Shown piece by piece: positions 340 through 57,940 of a DNA stretch of 64,000 bases. The first letter of the stretch is position 1. Every line of letters begins with the position of its first letter. The DNA is taken from the sequence record MK250028.1, one strand, 5' to 3'. The notes beneath the pieces are model-generated. The model saw nothing but the letters and a program-made list of their open reading frames with translations. It was not told the DNA's origin and made no database searches. The position numbers and the translations under genes are program-made.

Positions 340-410
340 GGGTATTTAGCTGGAAGGTCAAGCATCTGACTGTTAATCAGAAGACGTGGGTTCGATTCCC
401 TCAGTACCCG
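340..410 (+). tRNA. trnN: tRNA-Asn(GTT)
   Basis: GGGTATT/AGTACCC acceptor, TCTGA-CTGTTAA-TCAGA anticodon arm, GTTCGATTC T-loop; short D-arm. Confidence 0.9.
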
Positions 411-520
411 CAAGTTAAAAACATAACATTTTATATATGAAGGCTCGTACCTTTCAAATTCAGATGATACCGTCAAGGCGGAGATATATAATGTTTCTGA
501 ATATGTTTTTTGATGATTGA

Positions 521-693
521 TTAAATAATAACGTAGTTTAACGGTAAATGAAGTCTTACGTTAAAGTAAGGGTTAAATAATTTAAGAAATAAAAACAGCG
601 CTATTTCTTTTATTTCTTAAAAAGAAGGGTTCATCACTGCGTATTGCAACTATGAAGTAAGGGAAGTGCAACTCCACCCTGTTAGTTATTTAA
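521..693 (+). ncRNA. Over-sized tRNA-like RNA (D-arm-like 5' part, extra long hairpins, degenerate T-arm)
   Basis: Ends pair 12 bp with one bulge (521-532/681-693); TAGTTTAACGGTAAAT D-arm-like segment; perfect 13-bp inverted repeat 582-594/608-620. Confidence 0.45.
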
Positions 694-760
694 TCTTATT
701 TTTAATTTAAATTAAATTTTTATTATAGTATACCACTTGTGAAAGCAGTATACTAGATTT

Positions 761-833
761 AGATGGTTAACTCAGTGGTTAGAGTTCTCGGCTTACATCC
801 GAGCTGTCAGGAGTTCGAATCTCTTACCATCTA
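761..833 (+). tRNA. trnV: tRNA-Val(TAC)
   Basis: AGATGGT/ACCATCT acceptor, CTCGG-CTTACAT-CCGAG anticodon arm, canonical T-arm. Confidence 0.95.
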
Positions 834-843
834 CCTTTTGGGT

Positions 844-1048
844 TTGTCTTTCGTATAGACATGGTATTACTATGGTCCTAAAGAAAAGAGAAGTAACGAG
901 GTATGAAAATGAAATATAGATAAGGGGAAAGGAGCATTAACTGCGAGTGCAGTGTGCAAAATGGAACTGGAGTGAAAGATGATTAGTGAAGCGAAAATTG
1001 AAGTATGTATTGTAAGGATAAAGGTGTGTTCGAATCCATCAAGACAAC
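844..1048 (+). ncRNA. tRNA-like termini enclosing a purine-rich insert of about 150 nt
   Basis: TTGTCTT/AAGACAA acceptor, Gln/Glu-like D-arm GTAT..ATTAC, T-arm GGTG(T)G-TTCGAAT-CCATC; no anticodon stem. Confidence 0.5.
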
Positions 1049-1387
1049 TAATAAAAATATTTATAATTTAAATAGACTTTTATATGTTTATTCAATATAA
1101 ATATTGAATCATAAAATATGAAGATATTTATGTTTTATATATTGAGTATTTATGAATTGAGTCGTTAGAAGAATTTAATTTATAAATTATGTATGTAAAA
1201 ATTAAATAAATTCATATTTTTAAAAAGATAAGATTTAGATAATTATTTTTCTATATAGTTAATATATAGTTTTTAAGGTTAACTTCATATATATTATAAA
1301 ATTTATATATGTTATTAAGTTAAATATCTAAATATTGTTTTTAACTCAAAAGAATTTTATAGGGTATTATCTAAATCTCTATAAATT

Positions 1388-1461
1388 GGGGGTATAGCTC
1401 AGTTGGCTAGAGCATCTGCTTTGCACGCAGAGGGTCATGGTTTCGAGTACCATTATCTCCA
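1388..1461 (+). tRNA. trnA: tRNA-Ala(TGC)
   Basis: Canonical cloverleaf with G3:U70. Confidence 0.97.
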
Positions 1462-1680
1462 CGCTAGGTGTGAAACATTACAGTAATAAGGATTAAACTA
1501 TATTATTAGACAATATACTTAATTACTTATTAAATAAATGAATTAAAGTAAACATGTAGAATATATTATTAAGTCTAAATATAAAATATATTTGAAGGCG
1601 TATGTTAATTTCATTCTGGTTAGAACCTATTTTAAATCCTATAGGTGAACGGGCAGCGGTGAATGTTTCAGGTAAAATTT

Positions 1681-1785
1681 AATGAAATATATTATCCCAC
1701 AGGGCAAGGGCGTGCTATTAAAATACCGTAAAGCCGGTAAGCTATAAGAGTATTAAAAGGTTCAATTCCTTTTGTATATTTCATT
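1681..1785 (+). ncRNA. Degenerate tRNA-like RNA
   Basis: 12-bp terminal stem AATGAAATATAT/GTATATTTCATT, D-like CCC..GGG stem, T-arm AAAAGG-TTCAATT-CCTTTT; anticodon arm poorly paired. Confidence 0.45.
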
Positions 1786-1791
1786 AATTTT

Positions 1792-1874
1792 GGGTGAGTG
1801 TCCCGAGTGGCAAAGGGGGCTGACTGTAAATCAGCTGTCATTTGACTTCGTAGGTTCGAGTCCTACCTCACCCA
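1792..1874 (+). tRNA. trnY: tRNA-Tyr(GTA)
   Basis: Class II cloverleaf, GCTGA-CTGTAAA-TCAGC. Confidence 0.97.
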
Positions 1875-1879
1875 CAAAT

Positions 1880-2296
1880 ATGTCAGAATTAAAAGAATAT
1901 ATATGTGAATCTTGTAATAAAAAGTTTTATTCTACTAAGACTTTTAGAAAAGATAGACATATAAAATGTGATGAATGCAAACAAAAACGTAAACATTCTA
2001 AAGAAAATGAATTAAATAGTATATTAGATTGTTCTAAAAGAACAATATCTAAAATATTGAAACGTTCAAAAATAGGATGTGCAATATGTGGGTGGAATGA
2101 ATCTACTTGTGATATTCATCATATAATAGAAAAATCTAATGGTGGAACTGATGATATTTCTAATTTAATTATTGTATGTCCAAATCATCATAGAATGATA
2201 CATACGAATAAATGCTATTCAATAGATTATTTACAAAGTTTATCTATTAAAAATACATTTAATAATTGGAAAGATTATTATCATCCAGAAAGATAA
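1880..2296 (+). CDS. Free-standing HNH endonuclease with N-terminal Zn finger
   Basis: CAICGW..CDIHHI..GG..NLIIVCPNHH motif. True start is ATG 1880; the ORF-track extension runs through tRNA-Tyr. Confidence 0.9.
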   Translation: MSELKEYICESCNKKFYSTKTFRKDRHIKCDECKQKRKHSKENELNSILDCSKRTISKILKRSKIGCAICGWNESTCDIHHIIEKSNGGTDDISNLIIVCPNHHRMIHTNKCYSIDYLQSLSIKNTFNNWKDYYHPER

Positions 2297-2318
2297 TTAG
2301 TTATGTAAGTTAAGATAT

Positions 2319-2393
2319 GGTGCGTTAGTTCAGTTTGGTCAGAATGCTACACTGTCACTGTAGAGGTCACGGATTCGAGTTCCGTACGCACCG
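2319..2393 (+). tRNA. trnD: tRNA-Asp(GTC)
   Basis: Canonical cloverleaf, CTACA-CTGTCAC-TGTAG. Confidence 0.96.
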
Positions 2394-2402
2394 CAAAAAT
2401 TT

Positions 2403-2638
2403 GGTTATATAGTTCAAAATAGGTGGAGTAGTTAATAACTGGTAATTGACATGAATATCTATTGGAAGTAATATAAAAACTAATATGAGATGTTTGCGGA
2501 TCAAATGGTATTATTCTTAAGCTCTTTTACCGTTATTAGTTTTTATATTATGAGTAAGTAGAGAATACAATAATTATCGTTTACTCATAGAATACCCTGG
2601 GTCGAGGGAGATTAATGGTTCGAATCCATTTATAACCG
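2403..2638 (+). ncRNA. tRNA-like RNA with a three-hairpin insertion of about 170 nt in the D-loop and a shortened anticodon arm
   Basis: GGTTATA/TATAACC acceptor, GTTC/GAAT D-stem separated by the insert, AATGG-TTCGAAT-CCATT T-arm; perfect 16-bp inverted repeat 2469-2484/2535-2550 inside. Confidence 0.7.
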
Positions 2639-2672
2639 CTATGAATATTATTAGATATGTTTATTGAAACAT

Positions 2673-2743
2673 TGGACTATAGTATAATGGTAGTACAGAA
2701 GATTTTGGTTCTTCTAGACTGGGTCCGAATCCCGGTAGTCCAA
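2673..2743 (+). tRNA. trnQ: tRNA-Gln(TTG)
   Basis: TGGACTA/TAGTCCA acceptor, GAAGA-TTTTGGT-TCTTC; T-loop TCCGAAT is atypical. Confidence 0.9.
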
Positions 2744-2783
2744 CGATTTTAGTGAATATTTAAAAATAATAAAAATATTATAT

Positions 2784-2856
2784 TGCGGGATGGAGCAGTT
2801 GGTAGCTTGTCGGGCTCATAACCCGAAGGTCGTGTGTTCGAGTCACACTCCCGCTA
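2784..2856 (+). tRNA. trnM: Initiator tRNA-fMet(CAT), copy 1
   Basis: 1:72 mismatch (T:T), three G-C pairs at the base of the anticodon stem. Confidence 0.95.
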
Positions 2857-2865
2857 CTATTAAAT

Positions 2866-3026
2866 GGACCTTGCGTATGGCTGGTGCCTGTACATTGGAC
2901 TGAATTAACAGAATAAACTGTATAAAATTAATCTCTATATATTATATTTTATGGATATAAAATTATTAGTTCGATTCTAATTATAGAGACAATCCAGGGG
3001 TTGTGGTTCGATTCCACAAGGGTCCA
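2866..3026 (+). tRNA. trnF: tRNA-Phe(GAA) interrupted by an 86-nt insert (exons 2866-2904 and 2991-3026)
   Basis: Joining the exons gives a 75-nt cloverleaf with TTGGA-CTGAAAA-TCCAG, GGACCTT/AGGGTCC acceptor and TGTGG-TTCGATT-CCACA T-arm. Confidence 0.85.
2905..2990 (+). other. Putative tRNA intron with nested tRNA-like acceptor/T-arm domain
   Basis: ACAG-AATAAA-CTGT hairpin; TCTCTATA(2932-39)/TATAGAGA(2982-89) stem; ATTAG-TTCGATT-CTAAT T-arm; ends in C. Confidence 0.8.
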
Positions 3027-3078
3027 CTTTAACTGAAAAATCATATATACAGTTCGAATAAATAAAATTAATTTTATT

Positions 3079-3945
3079 ATGAATTGCGAAAATTGTGGGA
3101 AATATTATATTAAACCTATTTATGGTTCTGGACGATTTTGTTGTGGAAGTTGTAGATGTGCATATACAAATAAACATAGGAAAATATCTAACGAAACAAA
3201 AGAAAAAATATCAGAGTCATTAAAAAGGTATTATAATATAAAAAATGATATAAAAATTAAAAAATATTTTTGCGGTACATTATAGTTAAATAATGAAAAC
3301 CCTGAAATATCAAAACATTAGTCATCAAAATGGTTTAATAAATTAATACCATTTGGATTAAATATTAATACATTATATACAAAAAAATTTGTTGATGAAT
3401 ATAATAAAGTTAAAGATTTATTATATACTGAATATGTAATTAATCAATTATCACCAAAAGATATTTATATTAAATATAATTGTAAAAAATATATAAATAA
3501 TTCTGAAACTTTATTACATCTATTTAAATCATATAATTTTCCTATACGACATTTTAGTGAATCAACAACAGTATCATATTTACATGGTAAATTAAAAGGA
3601 CCCACACATACATTAGGTAAAGATTGCTATCATATTACATGGAATAATAAAAAAGTATATTTACGAAGTACATATGAATTAGATTATGCATTATATTTAG
3701 ATTCAAAACAAATTGATTATGATGTTGAATGTAAGAGAATAAAATATTATGATTCTATTAAATAGAAATATAGATGCGCAATACCAGATTTTTATATTTC
3801 AAATAAAAATTTATTAGTTGAAGTAAAATCTAATTATACATTAGATATTTAGAATATGAAAGATAAATTTAATGAATATATAAAATTAGGATATAATGTT
3901 AAATTAATACTAGAACATAAAGAAACAGATTTATATAAATTATAA
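3079..3945 (+). CDS. Free-standing PD-(D/E)xK endonuclease with N-terminal Zn finger (code 15, 4 TAG)
   Basis: Open 288 aa with TAG=Q; CENCG..YGSGRFC and PDF..LLVEVKS motifs. Confidence 0.85.
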
Positions 3946-4021
3946 AATAATTATTAGAAATATACTTTACAGTTTTAATGTCGTATATTATCTAATAATG
4001 ATATAAACAAGTATAGACTTC

Positions 4022-4269
4022 CAAGTAGAATAATGAGTAAGTTTATAATTATATGCTAGCTAATTTATAGACAGAAGAACTGATAAGGGTTACAGGTCAA
4101 TTATTGAAAGGAATTGGTTTGAACATTAGTTCATAGATGTGAAGAGCAGCAGATTTCGTAAGAAGCCATAAGTTGACACACAACAATTTCGTAAAACAGC
4201 GCAAGTGCCTAATAGCGAGTATTCCTTTATATAAAGGGTGAAAAAGTCTGTGTCTCGTAAATCTACTTG
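4022..4269 (+). ncRNA. Candidate structured ncRNA
   Basis: Terminal 8-bp stem CAAGTAGA/TCTACTTG, nested AGACAGA/TCTGTGTCT pairing, GC-enriched, no ORF evident. Confidence 0.4.
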
Positions 4270-4277
4270 TTTAATTT

Positions 4278-4351
4278 TGGGTGGTAGTTCAGATGGTTAG
4301 AGCGCATCCCTGATAAGGATGAAGTCGTGAGTTCAAGTCTCACCCACCCAA
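4278..4351 (+). tRNA. trnI: tRNA-Ile(GAT)
   Basis: CATCC-CTGATAA-GGATG, canonical T-arm. Confidence 0.93.
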
Positions 4352-4539
4352 CAAATATTTAATAAAAAAGTTGTTAATAATATAAACTTTTAAATATTAT
4401 ATTCATATAAGATTATGAATTTAGTTCTTTGAAATATGAAAGAAAATAATTTATAAAATATTTTTTAATTACAAATAAAAATAAAAGATGTATCTTTTTA
4501 ATGTAATTAAAATAGTTATGTAAATTAAAATATAGAGTT

Positions 4540-4612
4540 GTTCCGTTAGCTCATCTGGCAGAGCACGATACTTTTAATATCGGGGTAACGAGTTCGAGTC
4601 TCGTACGGAACA
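4540..4612 (+). tRNA. trnK: tRNA-Lys(TTT)
   Basis: CGATA-CTTTTAA-TATCG, canonical cloverleaf. Confidence 0.95.
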
Positions 4613-4704
4613 CTATAACTTGATTAGTATATCTAAAATTAATTTATTAAAAAATATAAACATTTACTTATAAATTGAATATAATATAAGAGTTTAAAAA
4701 TTAC

Positions 4705-4778
4705 ACTACAGTAACTCAGTCGGTTAGAGTTCCAAGCTTATACCTTGGCGGTCGGGGGTTCAAGTCCCTCCTGTAGTA
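4705..4778 (+). tRNA. trnI: tRNA with TAT anticodon (nominal Ile, reads AUA)
   Basis: ACTACAG/CTGTAGT acceptor, CCAAG-CTTATAC-CTTGG; body resembles tRNA-Val at 761. Confidence 0.88.
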
Positions 4779-4974
4779 CAAATTGTAAATGAATTAAAGT
4801 ATTTGACTTATGATGAGACTTTAATTAGTAAGAAATATAAGTGTTTATGAAAGTTTATTTATGATGATGGAAGTCAATACAGCAAACATATATAATTATG
4901 ATAATGTTTACTAGAAAAAGAAAACTCAAATACTTAAAAATAAATGACTTCTGATTTTTATAATTTTGGTGAAT

Positions 4975-5048
4975 GGTTCTGTAGCTCAGTTGAACAGAGC
5001 AGTGCTCTTCTAAAGCACGGGTCGTGAGTTTGATCCTCACCAGAATCA
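4975..5048 (+). tRNA. trnR: tRNA-Arg(TCT)
   Basis: GTGCT-CTTCTAA-AGCAC; T-loop TTTGATC. Confidence 0.92.
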
Positions 5049-5093
5049 CATAATGGATTAAAGATAAATATATGAAACAATTAATTTTTATAT

Positions 5094-5390
5094 ATGATTA
5101 ATCCTGAAGTAATTATCAGTTAGGAAGACGTGAAAATAATTGATAGTTATAAAATAAAATCTATTAAAAACATGAAATGTGTTATTAATAGTATACGTGA
5201 AAAATGTGATAAAACTTATGTTATTCATAAAAGGAGTATGTATAGTTTAATAAATGAATGGAGATCACATAATCTTCTTTATGATTTGCATATAAAAAGG
5301 GAATAGACAAAAGATGTGGATTTAGATAATGAAACATTATTCAGAAAAATATGTTATTCAATATTATCTATATTTTATCTACATTTTTAA
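5094..5390 (+). CDS. Hypothetical protein (code 15, 2 TAG)
   Basis: Open 98 aa with TAG=Q; TAAATA upstream. Confidence 0.7.
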
Positions 5391-5725
5391 TATATAACGA
5401 GAGTTAGTAGTATAGCATTGTCCGGACCATTATTAAAAGTTTTAATTATTTCTTTTAGTAATGATATGCTGATTTAAATTATAAATAAATAGATTTAAAA
5501 AATAATTATGAATATAAGTAATTTAACCTTATATTTAAGAGAGACTGAAAGATTATTTTAATCTATTGATAATTAGTTTCAGGAGTTGAATATGGTTTTA
5601 ATCATGATATGTAGTTCCATTAAAATAAACTTCATGATATAGGAAGTATATGTTTTCTCGGTAAAGTATACGCCTGAATATTAGAATAAAAAGAATAGTG
5701 TCCGTAGATAAACTATTCAAATTTT

Positions 5726-5940
5726 GCTTCGATAGTTCAGTTGGTTAGAACGTCTGACTGTATACAGGAAACAACCTGATTAAATTAAACTACATAATGC
5801 TGTTAGGTATCAGACTTGCGGACGCAATATTGATTTATAACTATTATAGTAATAAATCTAAATCGCTGAAAGTTTAGTTGGTTCGAATCCAATTTATGTA
5901 GCTAATCAGAAAGTCGTAGGTTCGAGTCCTACTCGAAGCG
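5726..5940 (+). tRNA. trnN: tRNA-Asn(GTT) interrupted by a 141-nt insert (exons 5726-5761 and 5903-5940)
   Basis: Joining the exons gives a 74-nt cloverleaf with TCTGA-CTGTTAA-TCAGA (identical to tRNA-Asn at 340), a short variable loop and G73. Confidence 0.87.
5762..5902 (+). other. Putative tRNA intron with nested tRNA-like domain
   Basis: CAGG-AAACAA-CCTG hairpin; CTACATAA(5790-97)/TTATGTAG(5894-5901) stem; GTTGG-TTCGAAT-CCAAT T-arm; ends in C. Confidence 0.82.
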
Positions 5941-5945
5941 CAAAT

Positions 5946-6602
5946 ATGAGAGAAAAAGAATGTCGTATATGCCATATTCATGGTAATACATTATTTTCTT
6001 TATATACATATAATAATAAAATACATTGGGTATGTAATAAATGTTAGACAGAATATGTATAGCGACGTCGAGAACATTTAAAATTATTATCAGTTGCATA
6101 TAAAGGAAATAAATGTCAATGTTGTGGATATAATAAATGTATATCTGCATTAGAATTTCACCATATAGATCCTAATAAAAAAGAGTTTGGAATAGGATAT
6201 GCAGGTTATACACATGGATGGAATGATGTTAAATTAGAATTAGATAAATGTATTTTAGTATGCGCAAATTGTCATAGAGAAATACATGCTAATATAATAA
6301 AATGCCCAACTGAAATTATAAAAGATGAAGAAAATGTTAATATTTTATTAAATAAATTTAAATTTGATTCTATAAATAGGAATAATGATTATAAAAAATT
6401 AGTTGAAAAAATAGAACCAATTAAAAATTATACAATTCCTACAAAAGAAGAATTAATACAATTATTTAAGAAATATATTACATTTGAAAATATTGGTAGA
6501 TTATATGGTATTACAGGAAATGCCATTAAAAAATGGTGTAAAAAATATGATTTACCATATAAATCAAAAGAATTAAAAGAATATATAAATAAATTACCAT
6601 AA
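5946..6602 (+). CDS. Free-standing HNH endonuclease with C-terminal HTH-like region (code 15, 2 TAG)
   Basis: 218 aa; CQCCGY..LEFHHIDP..KCILVCANCHREIH. Confidence 0.88.
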
Positions 6603-6746
6603 ACGTCATGAGCCTTCTTAGAAAAAGGCGGTTTTAGTAACTGTACGAAGTATGTTAATACACGTGGTTAATATATATTTCAATAAGGGAAATTATAATG
6701 GATGTTGGCTAAGCAACTTCTTATATACGGTAATTTTTTAATATTT

Positions 6747-6850
6747 GGGAATATCTTCTCGTTGGTATGAGAACTCTACGGTAAGTAGAGTGCATTTGCA
6801 AACCGGTTGAAATGATCTTGCTTCACAGTGTTCGAATCCTGTTGTTCCCA
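6747..6850 (+). ncRNA. Non-canonical tRNA-like RNA (GTA triplet, G33, long variable region, bulged T-stem)
   Basis: GGGAATA/TGTTCCC acceptor, TTCTC/GAGAA D-stem, CTCTA-CGGTAAG-TAGAG, ACAG(T)G-TTCGAAT-CCTGT. Confidence 0.7.
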
Positions 6851-6950
6851 CAAATATTTTGAAAATATTTTTGATAAATATATAGACTTTACTATAAAGA
6901 TTACATATAATAATTATGAATTGAAAATAATTAAGATACGCAAATTAACT

Positions 6951-7022
6951 GGTGGGTTCGTATAGCGGTTAGTACTAGAGATTTTCATTCTCTAAACAGG
7001 AGTTCGACTCTCCTACCCACTA
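6951..7022 (+). tRNA. trnE: tRNA-Glu(TTC)
   Basis: AGAGA-TTTTCAT-TCTCT, canonical T-arm. Confidence 0.95.
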
Positions 7023-7034
7023 CTAATCAATAAT

Positions 7035-8030
7035 ATGAAATAGAATTTAGAATTTTTATCAGATGACGAATTAATATAGGAATATAGAAATTGTAATTAT
7101 TCTTTAAAAGCAGTTGATAAGAAATATAATAAATCTGGAAATACTTTATTACGATTATTTAGAAAACGTAATATAGATTATAATAAGATAAAGAATGATT
7201 ATTTATTACAATAGAAACAATTTGAAGAAAGTAAAGTTTTATATTGTGAGAATTGTGGTAAAGTAATAGATGGTTATTATGGTTCTGGAAGATTTTGTAA
7301 TAGATATTGTGCAACTGCATATGGCAATTCACATAGAGCAAAAAGAACAGAAGAATCAAAAAAGAAAACATCTATTAGTGTAAAAAATTCTATTAAATGT
7401 TAGATAGCTGCTGAACGTTCAAGAAAAATATATTAGTGCAAATATTGTAATAAAGATTTTTCTGTGTTTGATATACGCAATATTAGAGGAAGAACATATT
7501 GTTCAAAAGAATGTAAACACAAATATTTATCTGCACATACTGGTGGTTATCGAGAAGGTTCTGGAAGAGGCAAACAAGGATGGTATAAAGGAATTCATTG
7601 TGATAGTTCATGGGAATTAGCATTTCTTGTTTATTATAAAGATCATAATTTAAATATAGAACGTTGTAAAGAAAAAAGGTCTTATATTTGGAATAATGAA
7701 GTTCATTCATATTATCCTGATTTTATAACAGATGACGGGATAATAGAAATAAAAGGATATTCTACAGATTAGTGGAAATTAAAAGAAAACTAGAATCCGG
7801 ATGTAAAAGTTTTATATAAAGATGATATAAAACCATATTTAGATTATGTAATAAATACATATGGTACTGATTTTATTAAATTATATGATGGTTATAATCC
7901 AAAATTAGATTTGAAAAATTATACTTATGTATGGGTTCATAATGAAAAAGAGAATCATATGATTAGAACAGAATTATATGATGAATATATAAATAATGGT
8001 TATATAAGAGGAAGAAAAACTTTTAAATAA
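7035..8030 (+). CDS. Free-standing PD-(D/E)xK endonuclease with Zn fingers (code 15), same family as 3079
   Basis: 331 aa open with TAG=Q; CENCG..YGSGRFC, DSSWELAF, YYPDF..IIEIKG. Confidence 0.85.
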
Positions 8031-8107
8031 AAAATAGTTAAAAATAAACAAGATTTTAAATTTACGTTATTAAATTAAAAAGTTTCTTTATGAAATTAAT
8101 TTTAAAT

Positions 8108-8188
8108 ACTCCTATAGGCGAATTGGTCTAGCCACTAGATTAAGGATCTAGGTTTAATTACGTCTCGGTTCGAGTCCGAGTAGGAGTA
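8108..8188 (+). tRNA. trnL: tRNA-Leu(AAG)
   Basis: ACTCCTA/TAGGAGT acceptor, CTAGA-TTAAGGA-TCTAG, class II variable region. Confidence 0.9.
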
Positions 8189-8269
8189 CAATAATAATAT
8201 AAAATATTTTCTTATTTTATTATCAATTTCAAAAATAAATTAGATAAATAATAAGTTGAAATAATTTAT

Positions 8270-8342
8270 GCTGGATTAGCACAGTTGGTAGTGCGACGCA
8301 CTTGTAATGCGTAGGTCGTTGGTTCGAATCCGACATTCAGCT
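8270..8342 (+). tRNA. trnT: tRNA-Thr(TGT)
   Basis: ACGCA-CTTGTAA-TGCGT. Confidence 0.96.
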
Positions 8343-8369
8343 CAACATAACTTAATAATGTTTTTATAT

Positions 8370-8665
8370 TGCTGAATAATCTGTTAGCAGTGGATAAGGC
8401 ATTTAGGTTATATCTGAAAAGATATGATTTAGAGTAATCAATATTAAGAAACATAAGGTTAAAATAGCCATGGTTGGCCAACCATGAGTGACGTAAGAAA
8501 GGTCAAATCGTAGAATGGTATATGATGCTTGTAGCCTTTGAAGGTAATCAATCCTTCCGACATTTAGGAGTTAGCGTCATGAACTAACTTGTCGTGACTG
8601 AATAATGTGCTTAATATGTAATAGGGTTTGATGGTAGTCAGGAATCCATCTATGAATTCATTATT
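8370..8665 (+). ncRNA. Candidate structured ncRNA between trnT and trnM
   Basis: 18-bp perfect palindrome 8469-8486 plus several GC-rich hairpins; no ORF evident. Confidence 0.4.
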
Positions 8666-8683
8666 ATTTTTATGTTTTTATAT

Positions 8684-8756
8684 TGCGGGATGGAGCAGTT
8701 GGTAGCTTGCAGGGCTCATAACCCTGAGGTCGTGTGTTCGAGTCACACTCCCGCTA
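8684..8756 (+). tRNA. trnM: Initiator tRNA-fMet(CAT), copy 2
   Basis: Identical to the 2784 copy except for two compensated pairs in the anticodon stem. Confidence 0.95.
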
Positions 8757-8878
8757 CTAGTATGATGCATTTATTTTATGAATATGGATAACTGTTCGCG
8801 ATTGTGTATCTATAAAGTAATATTATAAATGAGGAAATATGAATGACAGTGATAATAATTGTACAATAAAACACTGCA

Positions 8879-8948
8879 TCCTGTTTGTTGTAACGAAAGC
8901 ATTTTCTCTTGAAAAGTGAAGGTTACGGTTTAATTCCGTAGACAGGAA
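8879..8948 (+). pseudogene. Degenerate tRNA (possible CTT/Lys anticodon)
   Basis: TCCTGTT/GACAGGA acceptor and TACGG-TTTAATT-CCGTA T-arm; weak D and anticodon arms. Confidence 0.55.
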
Positions 8949-9089
8949 CAAATTTTAATAGTCTATATTTAATTATATAGAATCGTAACTACAAGAACAT
9001 TAAATATTTTTAGTGGAAAGTCTTGGAGACCATCGTATTGGTACTGAGTTATAAGGTTCTCACAGAGTATAAACCTTAATTTTTTATTT

Positions 9090-9175
9090 GGAAAGGAAAT
9101 TGCGACGGCTCGCAAGCTTGTCTTGAAAACAAGTCGTACAGTGAAATGTATGGGGATCGACACCTCTCCTTTCCG
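9090..9175 (+). tRNA. trnS: tRNA-Ser(TGA)
   Basis: CTTGT-CTTGAAA-ACAAG, long variable arm, G73; T-loop ATCGACA. Confidence 0.88.
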
Positions 9176-9237
9176 CATTTTGTTTTACATATTTAAAGAC
9201 ATTATATATTTATAATATATAATGTCTTTAATTTTTA

Positions 9238-9245
9238 TATAAATA
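9238..9245 (+). promoter_or_regulatory. T4-type late promoter-like TATAAATA
   Basis: Exact match to the T4 late consensus just upstream of a TAG-containing gene; TAAATA recurs before several other TAG genes. Confidence 0.4.
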
Positions 9246-9267
9246 TTGAAATTTATTTTATTCACTT

Positions 9268-10260
9268 ATGAACAAATATATAAAGCAATTAGTTGAATAT
9301 TATTTTCATAACGAAAAAGAATTATATGAAAACAATTATAGAAAATTTAGAGAGAATTTTAATTGGTCTTATGAAAGACGATTATTATATCAATATAATA
9401 ATGATGTAGATTTTGATAATATAGTAAATGAAGAATATCATATAAGTGATGTTTTTGATGATGTTATAGATGTTATAGGAAATATTTATAAGGATAATAT
9501 AGATATAAGTAATGATATAAAAGTATATACAGGATATAATTTTAATATAAAAGATTCTTTATGTAAAAAACTAGATAATGAAAATATAAAATATCCTATA
9601 TATGTTTATATATTAAACGATACAGAATCAACTTCATATTCATATATAAAAAGTGAAGATAAGAATAATAATGAAATTGTTATATATTTAAATTCATATA
9701 TGATATAGGATAATATATAGTTATTACGTGATTCATGTAAACATGAGTTTTTACATATTAGAGAAATGTATGCATTAGAAGATAAAGATGTTTTATAGTC
9801 TAATAAAAATAAATTACCTGATGATGAAAAAAATCCTTTTAACTGGGATAATCCAAATTATTTTGATAAAAGTTTAAGATTATGTTATATATTTAATAAG
9901 TCTGAAGAACGAGCAAGATTAAATGCAGTATATGAACATATTAAATCAGAAGATGAAGATATTGATTCATTAAATAATATAACGTTATTAAACGAAATGA
10001 AATAGTGTATAAACACATTAAGAACTATTTTTATTTCTAATAATTATGGACCTATGGAAATATATAATTACTCATGCTATAAATATCATTTGATAAAATA
10101 TAAGTTAAACAAATATCATTTTGATTATAGACCAAGATTATCTGAATATTCATAGGATGACAAAGATAAATTTTAGGCAATGATATTTGAGTTACAAATA
10201 AATTATAGAAAATTCAAATAGGATATAAAGAAAATAATTTATAATAAATTTCATAAATAA
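9268..10260 (+). CDS. HExxH putative Zn metalloprotease (code 15)
   Basis: 330 aa open with TAG=Q; CKHEFLH motif. Confidence 0.7.
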
Positions 10261-10291
10261 TTATGGATAGTTTTGATAAAGAAATAAAGAT

Positions 10292-11065
10292 ATGAATATA
10301 ATAGGAAATTATATATATGGTTCAGAAGATTCAACTGATGTAGATATTGCATATATAGTTGATGAATTACCATCATTACAAGAATGTAAAAAGTTTTGTT
10401 CGGCTGATAAGAATGAAAACAGAAACTTAATAACGATAAATAACGGTATTATAACTAATTGTTATAAAGGAACAGTTGATGAATTAAATAATGCGATATT
10501 AGATACATATAAGTTACATGAACAAAATACAGAATTACTTATTAATAGAAAGGTTGGTAGAGATATACCATTGAAACTTATTAGAGCAATACGTGCAATG
10601 TTATCACATCTTTCTAGATCGCAATATAGAAAAGAAATAAAATTAGCATTAAGAAGTAATTGGTATAAGAGGTTAGACGTATTATTAAGTATTAATTTAG
10701 AATATATTGATTTTGATAAATTAAACAATAATATGTCAAGAGAAGATATATTGAAATTATTTGCATTTCAAATAGGTCAATGCATGGGACTTATATATGC
10801 AAGAAAAGAATTATATACAAAAAATGATGTTATTACATGGATAGGCAGTAATCTCGGTTATTGTCTTGATGATTATTTAAAACGAAAATATACAAGTTTA
10901 AATATATTAAATTATTTAAAAGATAAATTAATCTACCAGATTCGTTATAATTTTCCAGCAATAGAGTGTGATAATAATATAGTAAAATTTTTAAAGGACG
11001 GACATAATAAATATTATGATTTAATGCAGGAATGCCAAATAAATATTGAAAATAAAGATATTTAA
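10292..11065 (+). CDS. Pol-beta superfamily nucleotidyltransferase-like protein
   Basis: N-terminal YIYGS..STDVDI (GS..DxD) motif. Confidence 0.6.
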   Translation: MNIIGNYIYGSEDSTDVDIAYIVDELPSLQECKKFCSADKNENRNLITINNGIITNCYKGTVDELNNAILDTYKLHEQNTELLINRKVGRDIPLKLIRAIRAMLSHLSRSQYRKEIKLALRSNWYKRLDVLLSINLEYIDFDKLNNNMSREDILKLFAFQIGQCMGLIYARKELYTKNDVITWIGSNLGYCLDDYLKRKYTSLNILNYLKDKLIYQIRYNFPAIECDNNIVKFLKDGHNKYYDLMQECQINIENKDI

Positions 11066-11068
11066 TAT

Positions 11069-11455: not shown

Positions 11456-11460
11456 TATAA

Positions 11461-11497
11461 AAAGGATGTTAATTAAGTTTAACATCCTTTCTTTTTT
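11461..11497 (+). terminator. Intrinsic terminator
   Basis: AAAGGATGTTAA/TTAACATCCTTT stem plus T-tract. Confidence 0.8.
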
Positions 11498-11510
11498 CAT
11501 ATAAACAATG

Positions 11511-11518: not shown

Positions 11519-11563
11519 TAACTGTATAAATGAAGTAATAATTAATTAAAAATTATAATAATT

Positions 11564-11920: not shown

Positions 11921-11936
11921 TAATTAAATATAAATA

Positions 11937-15992: not shown

Positions 15993-16676
15993 ATGAAACA
16001 TTATGATTCAATAGATAATATAAAATATAATACAGAATTAGTAGGTGAACAGGTATGGGCATTTAATAAATTGGATGGACAAAATTTTTGTGCTAAATAT
16101 TCTGTAAAGAAAAAAGAATTTACAAATTTTGGTTCAAGAAAATGTATGGTAGATGAGACATCAGAACAATTTGGTGATGCTGTACGTTATTTTAAATCAC
16201 ATAATTATTCATCTATATTAAGTAATATAGTTGAAAAACATAGGAGAAAGAAAGATATATTTTATGGCGTTGATGAAATTACGTTTTTCTTCGAATGGTA
16301 TGGTGATCATAGTTTTGCAGGATTTCATTCTGAAGAAGATAAAGATAATATGCATCTTGCATTAATTGATGTGTTCATCAAAAAGAAGGGATATATTGAA
16401 CCAAAGATATATATGGATCTATTTAGAGATTGTGGAATAGAATTGCCGCAATTAGTTTATACGGGACCATTATCAAATGATTTTATTAAAGATATTCAAG
16501 AAAATGACTGGACTGAACCAAATTGTAAATTTCCTTATGTAAAGGAAGGTGTTGTAATAAGGAGATCTACTATTTTAAAAGGACAACGAATGCCTAAAGT
16601 AAAAGTTAAAACAAAATGGTGGTTAACAGAATTGCATAAGAGATATACAGAAGAAGAATGTAAATTATTAGAGTAA
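15993..16676 (+). CDS. ATP-dependent RNA ligase-like nucleotidyltransferase (Rnl2-type core)
   Basis: Motifs KLDGQN (I), FFFEWYG (III), EGVVIR (IV), KVKVK (V). Confidence 0.75.
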   Translation: MKHYDSIDNIKYNTELVGEQVWAFNKLDGQNFCAKYSVKKKEFTNFGSRKCMVDETSEQFGDAVRYFKSHNYSSILSNIVEKHRRKKDIFYGVDEITFFFEWYGDHSFAGFHSEEDKDNMHLALIDVFIKKKGYIEPKIYMDLFRDCGIELPQLVYTGPLSNDFIKDIQENDWTEPNCKFPYVKEGVVIRRSTILKGQRMPKVKVKTKWWLTELHKRYTEEECKLLE

Positions 16677-56257: not shown

Positions 56258-56376
56258 TTATTAAAAAATATTTTATATATTTATATAAAATATGGAAGCA
56301 TTTAAACTTAAATGCTTCCATAAATATTAATTAGTTTCATTTTCTGATGATTGTTCATCTTCAATATTAGTTATAC
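55143..56376. repeat. 28-bp direct repeat (55143-55170, 56349-56376) flanking most of the LAGLIDADG gene
   Basis: GATTGTTCATCTTCAATATTAGTTATAC; encodes ITNIEDEQS at the end of both the ligase and the endonuclease. Confidence 0.9.
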
Positions 56377-57838
56377 CTGCATCTAATTCTTTTTCTTCCT
56401 TATTAACAAAACGATAGCACTTCAATTTGAATGCACGAGGTATCATATCATCTATTTTAATTACAATGCCTTCATGTGGAACTTTATTATTACATTCAGG
56501 TGATAACATTTCCATATAAAAATTCTTATCACTTGACATCTTATTCCAAAAATTTTCGTGCCAATGATTAGTTATATCAAGTTCAGGATACAAATCTTTA
56601 GCTTTACCATAATAATATTCAATTACAGGTGTTAATTCATGTTGAATACACCATACTTGTACTTCTCGTGGTGAAAATTCATGTACATCTCCATCAACAT
56701 TTGTTAAAGTAATACGATATATCATTATCTTAAAATGCTTTCCATATGTATACTCTTCACCAGACTTTAAAGGTACACATCCATAATCATATCCCTTTTG
56801 TATATAATTATTATTTGGAAGATAACCTACAATTTCTGCATAAATCATCATTCCCTTTATCATGTGTGGCTTTAATACATTAAATGCTTCACCCCATATA
56901 TCAAAATTATAGAATCCCTTATGATATACATTACCATTTTTTTCAGATGCCTTCATTATATACTGGTTTTTTATAACAGTTCTTGATGAATATAAATAAT
57001 CATAATCATTAAATTCATAACCTGTTAAAAATTTCGCAATTTTCTGCTTTATAGTTAATTGTTTCTTACATAAAACATAACCAACACAAAGAGAAGTACC
57101 GTGCCATTTAGAACTTATATGTATATAATCATTAGGTTGAACAACAAATGGAACCTTCTTAACAAGTGCAGTGTCGTAATGGAACCTAAATTGTTCTGGT
57201 ATAACTCTGTTAAATCTCTTTAACTTTCGTTGTCTTCTCTTATATCTAGATTGATCACCTCCAGTTTTATTTCTCTTTATAAATATCTTTGGTATAAATT
57301 TCTTTGATAACCAAAATGATTTACCATTATGTTCAATAGTATCAAACCATGTTCCATCCTTTATATCATTCTCATTAACTTCTATATTAAAATTATCTAA
57401 TATAAAATTAAGAACTACTTGTAATTCTATCAAGAAACCATCTGATACACCATTAGGTAAAAATACTTTTTCAACTTCTCCAGTAGATGGATCAATTTTA
57501 TCCATTGTTGCTCGTAGTCTAATGGACTTCACTCTACCATTATCATCAAATAACCCAGTTTTATTAGGATTACTATTCATTTCATTTTTACGATATAAAT
57601 TAGCATATCTTAAAAATTCAGGATTTATTTGTGTACTTGATGGAAAGAATACATATTTTCCTGGTTGTGAATCCTTACTTACTATAACATTATAAATTGT
57701 ATCTCCACCTATTCTACAACACTTTAACTTGTTAACTTCAGGATTAGGATGTGGAGAGAAATCCTCTTCCTTGATATAAATTACACGTGAAACATAATTA
57801 GGGTGTAATTCACTTTCCTTCGACTTAATAAACTTCAT
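56327..57838 (-). CDS. RNA ligase-like protein with long N-terminal domain (possible upstream start 57868 with TAG at codon 3)
   Basis: KWHGTS (I), YAEIVG (III), EGIVIK (IV), FKLK (V). Confidence 0.8.
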   Translation of the reverse strand: MKFIKSKESELHPNYVSRVIYIKEEDFSPHPNPEVNKLKCCRIGGDTIYNVIVSKDSQPGKYVFFPSSTQINPEFLRYANLYRKNEMNSNPNKTGLFDDNGRVKSIRLRATMDKIDPSTGEVEKVFLPNGVSDGFLIELQVVLNFILDNFNIEVNENDIKDGTWFDTIEHNGKSFWLSKKFIPKIFIKRNKTGGDQSRYKRRQRKLKRFNRVIPEQFRFHYDTALVKKVPFVVQPNDYIHISSKWHGTSLCVGYVLCKKQLTIKQKIAKFLTGYEFNDYDYLYSSRTVIKNQYIMKASEKNGNVYHKGFYNFDIWGEAFNVLKPHMIKGMMIYAEIVGYLPNNNYIQKGYDYGCVPLKSGEEYTYGKHFKIMIYRITLTNVDGDVHEFSPREVQVWCIQHELTPVIEYYYGKAKDLYPELDITNHWHENFWNKMSSDKNFYMEMLSPECNNKVPHEGIVIKIDDMIPRAFKLKCYRFVNKEEKELDAGITNIEDEQSSENETN

Positions 57839-57940
57839 ACTAGATTTAATTTTATTTTCCTATGTCATTCTTTAGTTCGAGTCTCCACTACTCACGTATC
57901 ACCAGATTATTTTTTAATAGGAAAATAATCAAACCTATTA

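What the first reader, a model, noticed from the sequence alone, without database searches (positions are those of the whole stretch)
2905..5902. Candidate new tRNA intron class that uses a tRNA mimic to define its 3' splice site
Seen: two unrelated tRNAs have inserts of different length and position (36/37 and 35/36) but the same grammar. Each has 3 nt, a 4-bp stem with an AAWMAA loop, an ATWAAATTAA linker, then an 8-bp stem plus 5-bp T-arm plus C (equivalently 7 bp, N73, C74, as in all array tRNAs). The spacing agrees at both ends only for the Phe and Asn junctions, which cross-validates them. Inference: tRNA 3'-processing cuts after the mimic, a second cut is guided by the 5' hairpin, and a phage RNA ligase (15993 or 56327) joins the exons. 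This could gate tRNA supply or shield precursors from anticodon nucleases. I recall intron-containing tRNAs being mentioned for Lak phages but not this shared architecture; a literature check is needed.
Basis: partly seen in the sequence, partly recalled or inferred. Interest (0 to 1): 0.93.

Follow-up and report, generated by a model that had tools for sequence, protein, structure and literature searches.

The report
Mobile tRNA-mimic introns in Lak megaphage tRNAs
Two transfer-RNA genes of a giant gut phage (Lak-B1) are interrupted in the anticodon loop by short related inserts that each contain a small hairpin and a copy of a phage pre-tRNA; the inserts were reported in 2019 as "enigmatic introns", but the shared design is new and suggests a testable way they could be cut out.

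Summary
The window is Prevotella phage Lak-B1/B9. tRNA-Phe(GAA) carries an 86-nt insert (2905-2990) and tRNA-Asn(GTT) a 141-nt insert (5762-5902). Uninterrupted alleles in other Lak genomes fix both junctions. Both inserts follow one plan: WTA, a 4-bp hairpin with an A-rich loop, an A-rich linker, a nested tRNA-like fold with a 13-bp acceptor/T stack, and a final C. The Thr and Gly inserts of other Lak genomes follow the same plan, so there are four related types. All stems covary. The nested fold copies the ends of ordinary Lak tRNA genes, which have C74 in 16 of 16 cases. The nearly identical Asn-type insert sits in three divergent Asn genes, so the element is mobile. Lak tRNA introns were already published (Devoto 2019) and called enigmatic. 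New here are the common architecture, the pre-tRNA mimicry, the B-lineage Phe copy, and the retyping of the published "Tyr" host gene as Asn. Splicing by tRNA end-processing enzymes plus a phage RNA ligase is plausible but untested. No RNA data exist, no enzyme is known for the 5' cut, and a canonical RNase Z cut may fall one nucleotide short.

The parts
2866..2904 (+). tRNA-Phe(GAA) exon 1. It ends after anticodon base 36.
   Evidence: 99.5% identical to the uninterrupted Phe gene of Lak-B2 up to this base. The spliced sequence is called tRNA-Phe(gaa).
2905..2990 (+). Phe-type insert (intron), 86 nt, at position 36/37.
   Evidence: Absent from Lak-B2, B4, B7 and B8. Present in B1, B3, B5, B6 and B9, and as a diverged 79-nt form in A1, A2 and C1. 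Found by the descriptor.
2908..2921 (+). 5' hairpin ACAG-AATAAA-CTGT, 3 nt after the 5' junction.
   Evidence: The same position holds CAGG/CCTG, CAAG/CTTG or CAATC/GATTG in the other types. All 4 aligned pairs show both-side changes across the types (three of them within the four 4-bp-stem types; pair 7-14 only versus the Thr type).
2922..2931 (+). A-rich linker ATAAAATTAA, which would be the leader of the nested mimic.
   Evidence: The motif AAATYAA(W) is conserved in all four insert types.
2932..2989 (+). Nested D-armless tRNA-like fold: a -1:73 pair, a 7-bp acceptor stem, a stem-loop, and a 5-bp T-arm with loop TTCGATT.
   Evidence: Rfam RF00005 scores 31.4 bits at 2933-2989. The T-stem has two compensatory double changes relative to the A1 copy.
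2990..2990 (+). Terminal unpaired C (position 74 of the mimic), the last base of the insert.
   Evidence: All four insert types end with this C after a 13-bp stack. Ordinary Lak tRNA genes have C74 in 16/16.
2991..3027 (+). tRNA-Phe exon 2 (2991-3026) plus C74 (3027).
   Evidence: The T-stem pair T-A in B1 is C-G in A1, a compensatory change between two interrupted alleles.
3079..3945 (+). Free-standing endonuclease-like ORF with in-frame TAG codons. It belongs to the same B1/B2 polymorphic block as the Phe insert.
   Evidence: The block 2905-3950 in B1 is replaced by 40 nt in B2. Homologs lie next to interrupted Asn (A2) and Gly (L124) genes. There is a weak endonuclease PHROG hit and no Pfam hit.
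5726..5761 (+). tRNA-Asn(GTT) exon 1. It ends after anticodon base 35.
   Evidence: The uninterrupted ortholog is in A1, A2 and C1 (L002:8798-8872). The spliced sequence is called tRNA-Asn(gtt).
5762..5902 (+). Asn-type insert (intron), 141 nt, at position 35/36.
   Evidence: Found by the descriptor. Devoto 2019 list the same sequence as the B1 'Tyr(GTA)' intron.
5765..5778 (+). 5' hairpin CAGG-AAACAA-CCTG.
5779..5789 (+). A-rich linker ATTAAATTAAA.
5790..5901 (+). Nested tRNA-like fold: an 8-bp plus 5-bp stack with T-loop TTCGAAT (T-arm at 5877-5893).
   Evidence: The A-lineage copy lacks 48 nt of the interior but keeps both stems.
5818..5869 (+). Extra 52-nt hairpin-forming segment inside the mimic. 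The A-lineage copy has a 4-nt loop here.
   Evidence: Comparison of the B1 and A1 copies.
5902..5902 (+). Terminal unpaired C, the last base of the insert.
5903..5941 (+). tRNA-Asn exon 2 (5903-5940) plus C74 (5941).
340..411 (+). Second, uninterrupted tRNA-Asn(GTT) paralog. Its orthologs in A1, A2, C1 and L228 carry the Asn-type insert.
15993..16676 (+). RNA ligase family protein (227 aa), a candidate exon-sealing enzyme.
   Evidence: PF09414 E=4e-8. phrog_548 RNA ligase.
56327..57868 (-). RNA ligase family protein (513 aa, ligase domain at the C-terminus), a candidate exon-sealing enzyme.
   Evidence: PF09414 E=5e-6. phrog_968 RNA ligase E=3.5e-23.

Best explanation
What it is: The two inserts belong to one family of small (79-141 nt), ORF-less, mobile introns that sit in the anticodon loops of Lak megaphage tRNA genes. 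Each has two parts. The first is a 5' module: W-U-A, a 4-5 bp hairpin with an A-rich hexaloop, and an A-rich linker. The second is a nested mimic of a Lak pre-tRNA: the linker acts as leader, followed by a 13-bp acceptor/T-arm stack with a TTCGAWT-type T-loop and one unpaired C.

Proposed mechanism:
1. The interrupted gene is transcribed as one precursor.
2. The host's tRNA end-processing enzymes treat the nested mimic as a pre-tRNA.
3. RNase P cuts at the 5' end of the mimic.
4. An RNase Z-type 3' endonuclease cuts after the unpaired C. That is the 3' splice site, and it leaves a 5'-phosphate on exon 2.
5. The 27-31 nt tail left on exon 1 is removed by a second endonuclease, 3 nt upstream of the hairpin. 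The enzyme is unknown. It could be a host RNase E/G-type enzyme or a phage enzyme.
6. The two halves are held together by the tRNA body and are sealed by one of the phage's Rnl2-family RNA ligases.

Spread: copies reach new tRNA genes by a mechanism that recognises the anticodon loop. In at least one case the intron travels together with a neighbouring free-standing homing-endonuclease gene.

Shown here: the architecture, common descent, covariation, mobility, the match to Lak pre-tRNA ends, and the presence of the ligase genes.

Inferred: that the inserts are spliced at all, and every enzymatic step.
For: - Four insert types share the grammar: Phe, Asn, Thr and Gly. The linker and acceptor sequences are recognisably homologous (AAATYAA-W-CTMYATR).
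- In a structure-based alignment 119 of 119 stem cells pair, and 16 of 17 pairs show changes on both sides. Controls with the partner slid by 1-3 columns give 2-6 such pairs. RNAalifold recovers the nested T-arm independently, with covariation.
- The stack length of 13 bp followed by C is kept in two ways. The Phe type uses an outer -1:73 pair. The other three use an inner extra pair. This suggests that distance from the T-loop matters.
- Ordinary Lak tRNA genes have T(-1) in 15/16 and C74 in 16/16 (P~1e-14). Position 75 is C in only 1/16 and A76 occurs in 12/16. The mimics plus the first exon-2 bases (C|AA three times, C|TA once) copy this context.
- Applying one rule to all types (cut 3 nt before the hairpin and after the C) gives a 7-nt anticodon loop and a callable tRNA in all four.
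- The interrupted Phe alleles of the A and B lineages have diverged introns, yet their exons keep pairing. This includes one compensatory T-A to C-G change, which argues for selection on the interrupted gene.
- No ribozyme family matches either insert.
- The window encodes two RNA ligases, a Thg1-like enzyme and two metallophosphoesterases. The published annotation adds a CCA-adding enzyme.
- Mobility: a ~99% identical Asn-type intron lies in three Asn genes with quite different exons that share only GACTGT^TAATC.
- The intron, an exon-2 variant and orf3079 form one presence/absence block between B1 and B2.
Against: - No RNA-level evidence of any kind exists: no spliced reads and no mapped cleavage products.
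- RNase Z normally cuts directly after the discriminator, and a C after the discriminator reduces its activity (PMC7479834). Counted from the T-loop, the cut would come one base early and leave the C on exon 2. The model needs either helix-end recognition or a cut after C74.
- No enzyme is identified for the 5' splice site. The hairpin's role is a guess.
- Each genome examined keeps an uninterrupted Asn(GTT) paralog, and host tRNAs are available, so unspliced disrupted genes could be tolerated.
- Intact exons around the Asn-type intron may only reflect recent insertion, not selection.
- The Phe and Asn mimics are not markedly more stable than shuffled sequence.
- Only 64 kb of a 548-kb genome was screened for enzymes.
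Confidence: 0.4

Rival explanations
1. Unspliced selfish insertion. The element is a small non-autonomous mobile DNA that lands in tRNA anticodon loops and simply inactivates the gene. The phage tolerates this because it has paralogs or can use host tRNAs. The tRNA-like part is a relic of the element's origin, or serves only its mobility.
For: - Every genome seen keeps an intact Asn(GTT) paralog beside the interrupted one.
- The nearly identical Asn-type intron in divergent exons indicates recent spread, so intact exons need not mean selection.
- The tRNA arrays are full of homing endonuclease genes, and one of them destroyed tRNA-Val in Lak-A2.
- There are no RNA data.
Against: - A pure DNA parasite has no reason to keep RNA stems through compensatory changes, a constant 13-bp stack plus C, or the exact pre-tRNA end context.
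- The Phe intron is old, having diverged between the A and B lineages, yet its exons still pair and include a compensatory change.
- There are no terminal inverted repeats, target duplications or IS200/605-type end layout (by inspection).
Confidence: 0.2
2. Gene within a gene. The nested tRNA-like RNA is the selected product, released by RNase P and RNase Z as a stable small RNA. It might act as a decoy for tRNA-targeting host defences or as a regulator. The host tRNA serves mainly as a transcription and processing platform. Exon ligation is secondary or absent.
For: - The mimic has all the features needed for excision as a tRNA-like RNA.
- Devoto 2019 already read the Thr intron as a possible tRNA.
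- By established knowledge, tRNA-like small RNAs released by RNase P/Z are known elsewhere (MALAT1 mascRNA).
Against: - The interiors of the mimics are not conserved between types. There is no common anticodon-like loop, the D-arm is present or absent, and one copy carries a 52-nt insertion.
- This model does not explain the conserved 5' hairpin module.
- It does not explain why insertion is always in an anticodon loop at a position that restores a 7-nt loop.
Confidence: 0.12
3. The inserts persist mainly as DNA-level protection and hitch-hikers in an arms race among homing endonucleases. The insert breaks the anticodon-loop recognition site of a tRNA-gene-targeting endonuclease encoded nearby and is copied into empty alleles together with it (collaborative homing). 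This is compatible with RNA-level splicing.
For: - The B1/B2 polymorphic block starts at the intron insertion site and ends right after the stop codon of orf3079.
- orf3079 homologs lie just downstream of interrupted Asn (A2) and Gly (L124) genes.
- An HNH gene starts 5 nt after the interrupted Asn gene.
Against: - The HNH ortholog also sits beside the empty Asn allele in A1, A2 and C1.
- A1 and C1 carry Phe and Asn introns with no adjacent orf3079 homolog.
- Asn-type copies in different genes share only 6 + 5 nt of flank, too little for repair-based homing.
- The endonuclease activity and target of orf3079 are untested, and it has no Pfam hit.
Confidence: 0.2
4. Known intron chemistry in disguise: either a minimal self-splicing ribozyme intron (group I-like) or a BHB-type intron cut by an EndA-like splicing endonuclease encoded elsewhere in the phage.
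For: - Bacterial and phage tRNA genes are known to host group I introns in the anticodon loop.
- Short ORF-less anticodon-loop introns are typical of archaea.
- Only 64 kb of the genome was screened here.
Against: - There is no Rfam ribozyme or intron match even at E<=10.
- 79-141 nt is far below group I size.
- No bulge-helix-bulge can be drawn around the junctions, and predicted folds show a three-way junction instead.
- The published Lak-A1 annotation, as far as it is held here as text (the file was cut when stored), has no entry matching 'splic' or 'RNase'.
Confidence: 0.05

Closest known systems
Lak megaphage 'enigmatic' tRNA introns (Devoto et al. 2019, Nat Microbiol, PMC6784885)
   Same: They are the same objects. 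The paper lists introns in Phe(GAA), Gly(TCC), Thr(TGT) and 'Tyr(GTA)' genes, notes their identity across cohorts, finds no Rfam hit, and says the Thr intron may itself encode a tRNA. The B1 'Tyr' intron sequence in its Table S6 is the 5762-5902 insert shifted by two bases.
   Different: - The paper describes no common architecture and no mimicry of pre-tRNA ends.
- It credits the B genomes with one intron, so the Phe intron of B1, B3, B5, B6 and B9 is not listed.
- Empty alleles show that the 'Tyr(GTA)' host gene is Asn(GTT), with the junction at 35/36.
Archaeal/eukaryal protein-spliced tRNA introns (BHB motif, EndA/Sen endonuclease, RtcB or Trl1 ligase), including intron transposition in Thermoproteales (review PMC4090602)
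   Same: They are short and ORF-less and mostly lie in the anticodon loop. They need protein enzymes and a ligase. Related introns are found in non-homologous tRNAs, which implies transposition.
   Different: - There is no bulge-helix-bulge.
- Junctions are at 36/37 and 35/36, not 37/38.
- The host is a bacterium, and no EndA is known for it or found here.
- The intron carries a tRNA-like fold and a conserved 5' hairpin instead.
Group I introns in bacterial and phage tRNA anticodon loops (for example cyanobacterial tRNA-Leu(UAA), and tRNA-fMet with I-Ssp6803I)
   Same: They sit in the anticodon loop of a bacterial-type tRNA gene. They are mobile and associated with homing endonucleases.
   Different: They are 200 nt or longer with a conserved catalytic core and are self-splicing. 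The Lak inserts are 79-141 nt with no match to any Rfam intron or ribozyme model.
tRNA-like processing signals: MALAT1/MEN-beta mascRNA and mitochondrial 'tRNA punctuation' (established knowledge)
   Same: A tRNA-like fold embedded in a longer RNA recruits RNase P and RNase Z, so the fold's ends define the cleavage sites. This is what the nested mimic is proposed to do.
   Different: Those systems produce RNA ends, not a spliced product. They are eukaryotic or organellar, and no ligation follows.
Phage T4 Rnl1/Pnkp repair of nicked tRNA anticodon loops; Rnl2-family ligases (established knowledge; the Lak rnlB annotation is)
   Same: A phage RNA ligase joins a 3'-OH and a 5'-phosphate within a broken anticodon loop that is held together by the tRNA body. 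This is the proposed last step.
   Different: In T4 the break comes from a host anticodon nuclease, not from removal of an intron. The Lak ligases are very divergent and have no PDB sequence relatives.

Membership tests
Lak-type tRNA-mimic intron (operational family defined here) | The insert lies in a tRNA anticodon loop, and removing it restores a 7-nt loop and a callable tRNA. | tested here: met
   Phe at 36/37 and Asn at 35/36, supported by empty alleles. ARAGORN calls the spliced sequences as tRNAs.
Lak-type tRNA-mimic intron (operational family defined here) | The 5' module: WTA, a 4-5 bp hairpin with hexaloop AAWMAA or AGTAAA, and an A-rich linker ending in AAATYAA(W). | tested here: met
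   Both window inserts and the Thr, Gly and A-lineage copies have it.
Lak-type tRNA-mimic intron (operational family defined here) | A nested tRNA-like fold with a 13-bp acceptor/T stack and a TTCGNNN T-loop, followed by one C as the last base. | tested here: met
   119 of 119 stem cells pair.
tRNA (Rfam RF00005), asked of the nested fold | Score at or above the gathering threshold of 29 bits. | tested here: inconclusive
   The Phe-insert mimic scores 31.4 bits but lacks a D-arm. The Asn-insert mimic gets no hit of its own. ARAGORN calls the Thr-type mimic tRNA-His(atg), and it folds as a cloverleaf.
Group I intron | A conserved catalytic core (P3-P9) and a length of about 200 nt or more. | tested here: not met
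   No Rfam intron or ribozyme match at E<=10. The inserts are 86 and 141 nt.
Archaeal-type BHB tRNA intron | A bulge-helix-bulge (two 3-nt bulges around a 4-bp helix) holding both splice sites. | tested here: not met
   Predicted folds and inspection show a three-way junction. The 4-bp helix is a local intron hairpin and does not pair the two junctions.
Archaeal-type BHB tRNA intron | An EndA-family splicing endonuclease is available. | not tested
   Twenty ORFs of the window were scanned against Pfam without such a hit. The stored part of the published Lak-A1 annotation has no 'splic' or 'RNase' entry. The rest of the 548-kb genome and the host were not screened.
IS200/IS605-derived miniature elements (PATEs) | Similar subterminal hairpins at both ends, insertion 3' of a fixed 4-5 nt target, and no TIR or TSD. 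| tested here: not met
   There is indeed no TIR or TSD. But the two hairpins are unrelated, the left hairpin is only 3 nt from the end, and the upstream targets differ (CTGAA, CTTGT, CTTCC, ACTGT).
Spliced intron (in the functional sense) | The exons are joined in RNA. | not testable with these tools

The most novel reading that the evidence does not exclude
These inserts define a new protein-dependent tRNA splicing pathway in the bacterial/phage world. The intron carries its own pre-tRNA mimic, so the universal tRNA end-processing enzymes (RNase P and an RNase Z-type nuclease) excise it. A hairpin-guided cut frees exon 1, and a phage RNA ligase seals the anticodon loop. The same RNA could spread by the reverse reaction, that is, ligation into cleaved anticodon loops. 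That would explain its presence at equivalent positions in non-homologous tRNAs.
Probability: 0.3. Interest if true: 0.88.

Novelty: new variant of a known kind. Interest (0 to 1): 0.62.

Why it matters
Apart from self-splicing group I introns, bacteria and their viruses are not known to have tRNA introns, and no protein-based tRNA splicing system is known there. The Lak introns have stood since 2019 as an unexplained exception.

Three findings turn that curiosity into a concrete hypothesis that can be tested at the bench:
- All the introns share one two-part design.
- The larger part is a faithful copy of a Lak pre-tRNA, including the conserved C74 context.
- The element moves between unrelated tRNA genes.

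If the hypothesis is right, it would be a third, independent solution to tRNA splicing. It would also link tRNA end-processing, phage RNA-repair ligases and mobile elements. If the inserts turn out not to be spliced, they are instead a new kind of tRNA-targeting selfish element in giant phages.

The work also corrects the published record. The host of the "Tyr" intron is an Asn gene, and five baboon Lak genomes (B1, B3, B5, B6, B9) have an unlisted Phe intron.

Tried and rejected
The true copies had to be picked out with my own descriptor.
- A stricter pattern found only Lak contigs in IMG/VR. In 185,579 reference genomes it found 10 chance hits, none with the grammar. No new insert type and no cellular copy was found. 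The patterns were built from the known types, so distant relatives could have been missed.
- MAFFT alignments of the cores were not consistent with the structure: the hairpin register was off and the Phe acceptor was shifted by one. I therefore did not build a covariance model. I counted pairs on a hand-made structural alignment in Python. RNAalifold on the MAFFT alignment recovered only the T-arm.
- A relaxed descriptor gave only AT-rich noise.
- Rfam at E<=10 showed nothing but tRNA in the inserts. It showed nothing in the conserved 3951-4277 spacer.
- A PDB sequence search with both ligases returned nothing useful.
- I considered the HNH gene at 5946-6602 as the homing partner of the Asn intron. 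I rejected this because its ortholog sits next to the empty allele in A1, A2 and C1.
- I considered an IS200/605-type miniature element and rejected it on end layout and the lack of a common target.
- I considered a BHB motif and could not draw one.
- A shared 'GG' in the interior loops, possibly an elbow contact with the T-loop, was noted. I give it little weight because the Gly-type fold puts one G in a stem.
- Literature searches for a later explanation of the Lak introns found none.

Full report
**1. What the window is.**
Bases 2600-6100 are 100% identical to Prevotella phage Lak-B1 and Lak-B9 (MK250020, MK250028). They are 99.9% identical to B3, B5 and B6. B2, B4, B7 and B8 match over only 70% of this stretch, and the human-derived A1, A2 and C1 match at about 84% over parts of it. 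The first 15 kb is a tRNA array, with 17 genes found by ARAGORN and 16 by Rfam. ORFs carry in-frame TAG codons, as expected for this recoded phage.

**2.
- tRNA-Phe(GAA) has exon 1 at 2866-2904, an 86-nt insert at 2905-2990, and exon 2 at 2991-3026.
- tRNA-Asn(GTT) has exon 1 at 5726-5761, a 141-nt insert at 5762-5902, and exon 2 at 5903-5940.
- The Phe insert reads TTA, ACAG-AATAAA-CTGT, ATAAAATTAA, then an 8-bp stem enclosing 25 nt and a 5-bp T-arm (ATTAG-TTCGATT-CTAAT), then C.
- The Asn insert reads ATA, CAGG-AAACAA-CCTG, ATTAAATTAAA, then an 8-bp stem enclosing 79 nt and a T-arm (GTTGG-TTCGAAT-CCAAT), then C.
- Empty alleles fix the junctions. Lak-B2 has an uninterrupted Phe gene, and A1, A2 and C1 have an uninterrupted ortholog of this Asn gene.
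- The first and last insert bases differ from the neighbouring exon bases, so 36/37 and 35/36 are unambiguous.
- The joined exons are called tRNA-Phe(gaa) and tRNA-Asn(gtt).
- A descriptor of the full grammar finds 2 sites in the window against 0.017 expected from dinucleotide shuffles.
- The nested fold of the Phe insert passes the Rfam tRNA threshold with 31.4 bits, as a D-armless tRNA.

**3. It is a family of four types.**
- A1 and A2 carry a 114-nt insert in tRNA-Thr(TGT) at 36/37. That site is empty in C1 and B1.
- A2, C1 and several metagenome contigs carry an 84-87 nt insert in tRNA-Gly(TCC).
- Both have the same order of parts: W-T-A, a 4-5 bp hairpin with loop AATAAA, a linker ending AAATTAAA, a nested tRNA-like fold, and C.
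- The linker and acceptor sequences are visibly homologous across types (AAATYAA-W-CTMYATR), so the types share an ancestor.
- In a structure-based alignment of seven distinct sequences, all 119 stem cells pair. 16 of 17 pairs change on both sides. Controls with the partner slid by 1-3 columns give 2-6 such pairs, and none of 2000 shuffles reaches the observed pairing.
- Part of the acceptor signal comes from a one-base register shift of the Phe type. The hairpin and T-stem changes are genuine compensations. For example, the Phe T-stem is ATTAG/CTAAT in B1 and AATGG/CCATT in A1.
- RNAalifold on an independent MAFFT alignment also recovers the T-arm with covariation.
- The stack of acceptor plus T-stem is always 13 bp followed by one C, but it is reached in two ways. 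The Phe type uses an outer -1:73 pair. The other three use an extra inner pair. This looks like selection on a distance.

**4. The nested fold copies a Lak pre-tRNA, not just a tRNA.**
- The 16 ordinary tRNA genes of the window have T at -1 in 15 cases and C at position 74 in all 16 (P about 1e-14 at 13.6% C).
- Position 75 is C in only one case, and A76 occurs in 12 cases.
- Counted from the T-loop, every mimic has a paired -1:73, then C74. The first two exon-2 bases supply A-A or T-A, so the local sequence C|AA or C|TA equals the commonest trailers of real Lak tRNA genes.
- The A-rich linker therefore sits where a 5' leader would.
- The interiors of the mimics are not conserved. The Thr type is a full cloverleaf (z = -3.45). 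The Gly and Phe types have one stem-loop. The B-lineage Asn copy has a 52-nt hairpin (5818-5869) where the A-lineage copy has a 4-nt loop.
- So the ends and the T-arm are what selection keeps.

**5. The element moves.**
- The Asn-type insert is 96-99% identical, apart from that 52-nt piece, in three Asn(GTT) genes whose exons differ almost completely. Their acceptor stems are GGGAATA in A1, GCTCAGA in contig L228, and GCTTCGA in B1. The three genes share only GACTGT^TAATC around the site.
- In the A lineage one paralog is filled and the other is empty. In the B lineage it is the reverse (window 340-411 is the empty one).
- Between B1 and B2, sequence identity runs up to base 2904 and resumes at 3951. 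In between, B1 has the intron, a diverged exon 2 and orf3079 (3079-3945), while B2 has only a 40-nt exon 2.
- orf3079 has a Zn-ribbon-like N-terminus shared with orf7035, and a C-terminus with a D...E-x-K-like motif and a weak endonuclease PHROG hit.
- Homologs of orf3079 lie just downstream of the interrupted Asn gene in A2, where they replace the first 49 nt of tRNA-Val, and near the interrupted Gly gene in L124.
- This suggests co-transfer with a free-standing homing endonuclease in some cases. It cannot explain jumps between genes that share only 11 nt.

**6. What is already known.**
- Devoto et al. 2019 reported Lak tRNA introns in Phe, Gly, Thr and "Tyr" genes and called them enigmatic. 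They found no Rfam match and noted that the Thr intron may encode a tRNA.
- Their "Tyr(GTA)" intron is the Asn-type insert, with tRNAscan's eukaryotic-mode boundaries two bases off. Empty alleles and the common rule give Asn(GTT).
- They credit the B genomes with one intron, so the Phe intron of B1, B3, B5, B6 and B9 is not in their table.
- Later Lak, recoding and jumbo-phage papers add nothing on mechanism.
- The objects are therefore known. The shared design, the pre-tRNA mimicry and the evidence for mobility are new.

**7. How it most likely works.**
- The best reading is an RNA-level intron removed with the help of tRNA end-processing enzymes.
- RNase P would cut at the mimic's 5' end, and an RNase Z-type enzyme would cut after the unpaired C. 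Both leave a 3'-OH and a 5'-phosphate, which an ATP-dependent Rnl-type ligase can join.
- The window encodes two PF09414 ligases. The tRNA body would hold the halves together, as in T4 anticodon-loop repair.
- The 27-31 nt tail left on exon 1 must be cut 3 nt before the hairpin, at a conserved W-U-A-(A)-C-A. I have no enzyme for this step.
- One point supports function of the interrupted genes. The Phe intron has diverged between the A and B lineages, yet the exons still pair, including a compensatory T-A to C-G change in the T-stem.
- Weak points:
  - There are no RNA data.
  - RNase Z normally cuts right after the discriminator and dislikes a following C. The model needs the enzyme to read the -1:73 pair as part of the helix, or a cut after C74. 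The universal C74 of Lak tRNA genes hints at the latter but does not prove it.
  - Intact paralogs and host tRNAs could make unspliced disruption tolerable.
- I put the full mechanism at 0.4. That the inserts are processed at the mimic I put somewhat higher.

**8. Rivals.**
- An unspliced selfish insertion (0.2).
- The mimic itself as the selected small RNA (0.12).
- A DNA-level role in a homing-endonuclease arms race (0.2; this is not exclusive of splicing).
- Ribozyme or BHB chemistry (0.05). This is disfavoured by size, by the absence of Rfam hits and by the predicted folds.

**9. Distribution.**
With patterns built from the four types I found copies only in Lak genomes and Lak-like contigs. 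I found none in 185,579 reference bacterial and archaeal genomes. More distant relatives would have escaped these patterns.

**10. Verdict.**
The class is not newly discovered, but its architecture gives the first concrete, testable mechanism for it.

Noticed in passing
window 340-14385 (16 tRNA genes): Every ordinary tRNA gene has C at position 74 (16/16). Almost every one has T at -1 (15/16) and A at 76 (12/16). Position 75 is C only once, so the genes encode C-N-A rather than CCA. T(-1) can pair with A/G73 in 15/16. This points to an unusual 3'-end maturation rule, or an RNase P contact, in Lak or Prevotella.
   Followed up: partly
window 5726-5941; L002:2385-2549: The intron host gene published as tRNA-Tyr(GTA) (Devoto 2019, Table S6) is tRNA-Asn(GTT) when compared with uninterrupted alleles. 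The published boundaries are shifted by two bases.
   Followed up: yes
window 2905-3950 versus L001:3306-3345: Between Lak-B1 and Lak-B2 a 1046-bp block (Phe intron, diverged exon 2 and orf3079) is replaced by a 40-bp exon 2. The flanks are 99.5-100% identical. B1, B3, B5, B6 and B9 have the block. B2, B4, B7 and B8 do not.
   Followed up: yes
L004:2906-3928 (Lak-A2) versus L002:2905-2953 (Lak-A1): In Lak-A2 a 1023-bp cassette with a homolog of orf3079 (39% identity) replaces the first 49 nt of tRNA-Val(TAC). This destroys the gene, and it matches the missing Val in the published A2 tRNA table.
   Followed up: partly
window 1880-2296, 3079-3945, 5946-6602, 7035-8030 (+); 37850-38746, 39830-40366, 55094-56257 (-): There are many free-standing homing-endonuclease-like genes. 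Two are HNH (one starts 5 nt after the interrupted Asn gene). Two are related ORFs that share a CxxC...GSGRFC N-terminus. The others are GIY-YIG, NUMOD4/HNH_3 and LAGLIDADG. Four of them lie inside the tRNA array.
   Followed up: partly
window 3951-4277: A 327-bp spacer without an ORF lies between orf3079 and tRNA-Ile. It is G+C-richer than its surroundings, is 100% identical in B1 and B2, and has no Rfam match at E<=1. It may be one of the expressed 'large intergenic regions' mentioned for Lak phages.
   Followed up: partly
window 5818-5869: The B-lineage Asn-type intron carries a 52-nt hairpin-forming segment inside the mimic's inner stem-loop, where the A-lineage copy has a 4-nt loop. It is an insertion within an insertion, of unknown origin. 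No other copy was seen in the loci compared.
   Followed up: partly
window 60409-61221 (-); 43321-44040 (-); 52486-53265 (-): A Thg1-like tRNA-His guanylyltransferase family protein (PF04446, E=1e-24) and two calcineurin-type phosphoesterases are encoded in the window. Together with the two RNA ligases they could form an RNA end-healing and repair set.
   Followed up: no
window 2866-3026 and L001:3267-3342: tRNA-Phe(GAA) is structurally odd in all Lak alleles, interrupted or not. It has an oversized, weakly paired D region and low tRNA scores, and tRNAscan labelled it 'pseudo' in the published tables.
   Followed up: no
L002:1130-1221; L003:8718-8806: Two long tRNA calls in the A/C lineages were seen: Trp(CCA) of 92 nt and Arg(TCT) of 89 nt in C1, against 74 nt in A1. 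They have unusually long extra arms. The Trp extra arm begins with TTAACAG, the same heptamer that starts the Phe intron. This may be coincidence.
   Followed up: no
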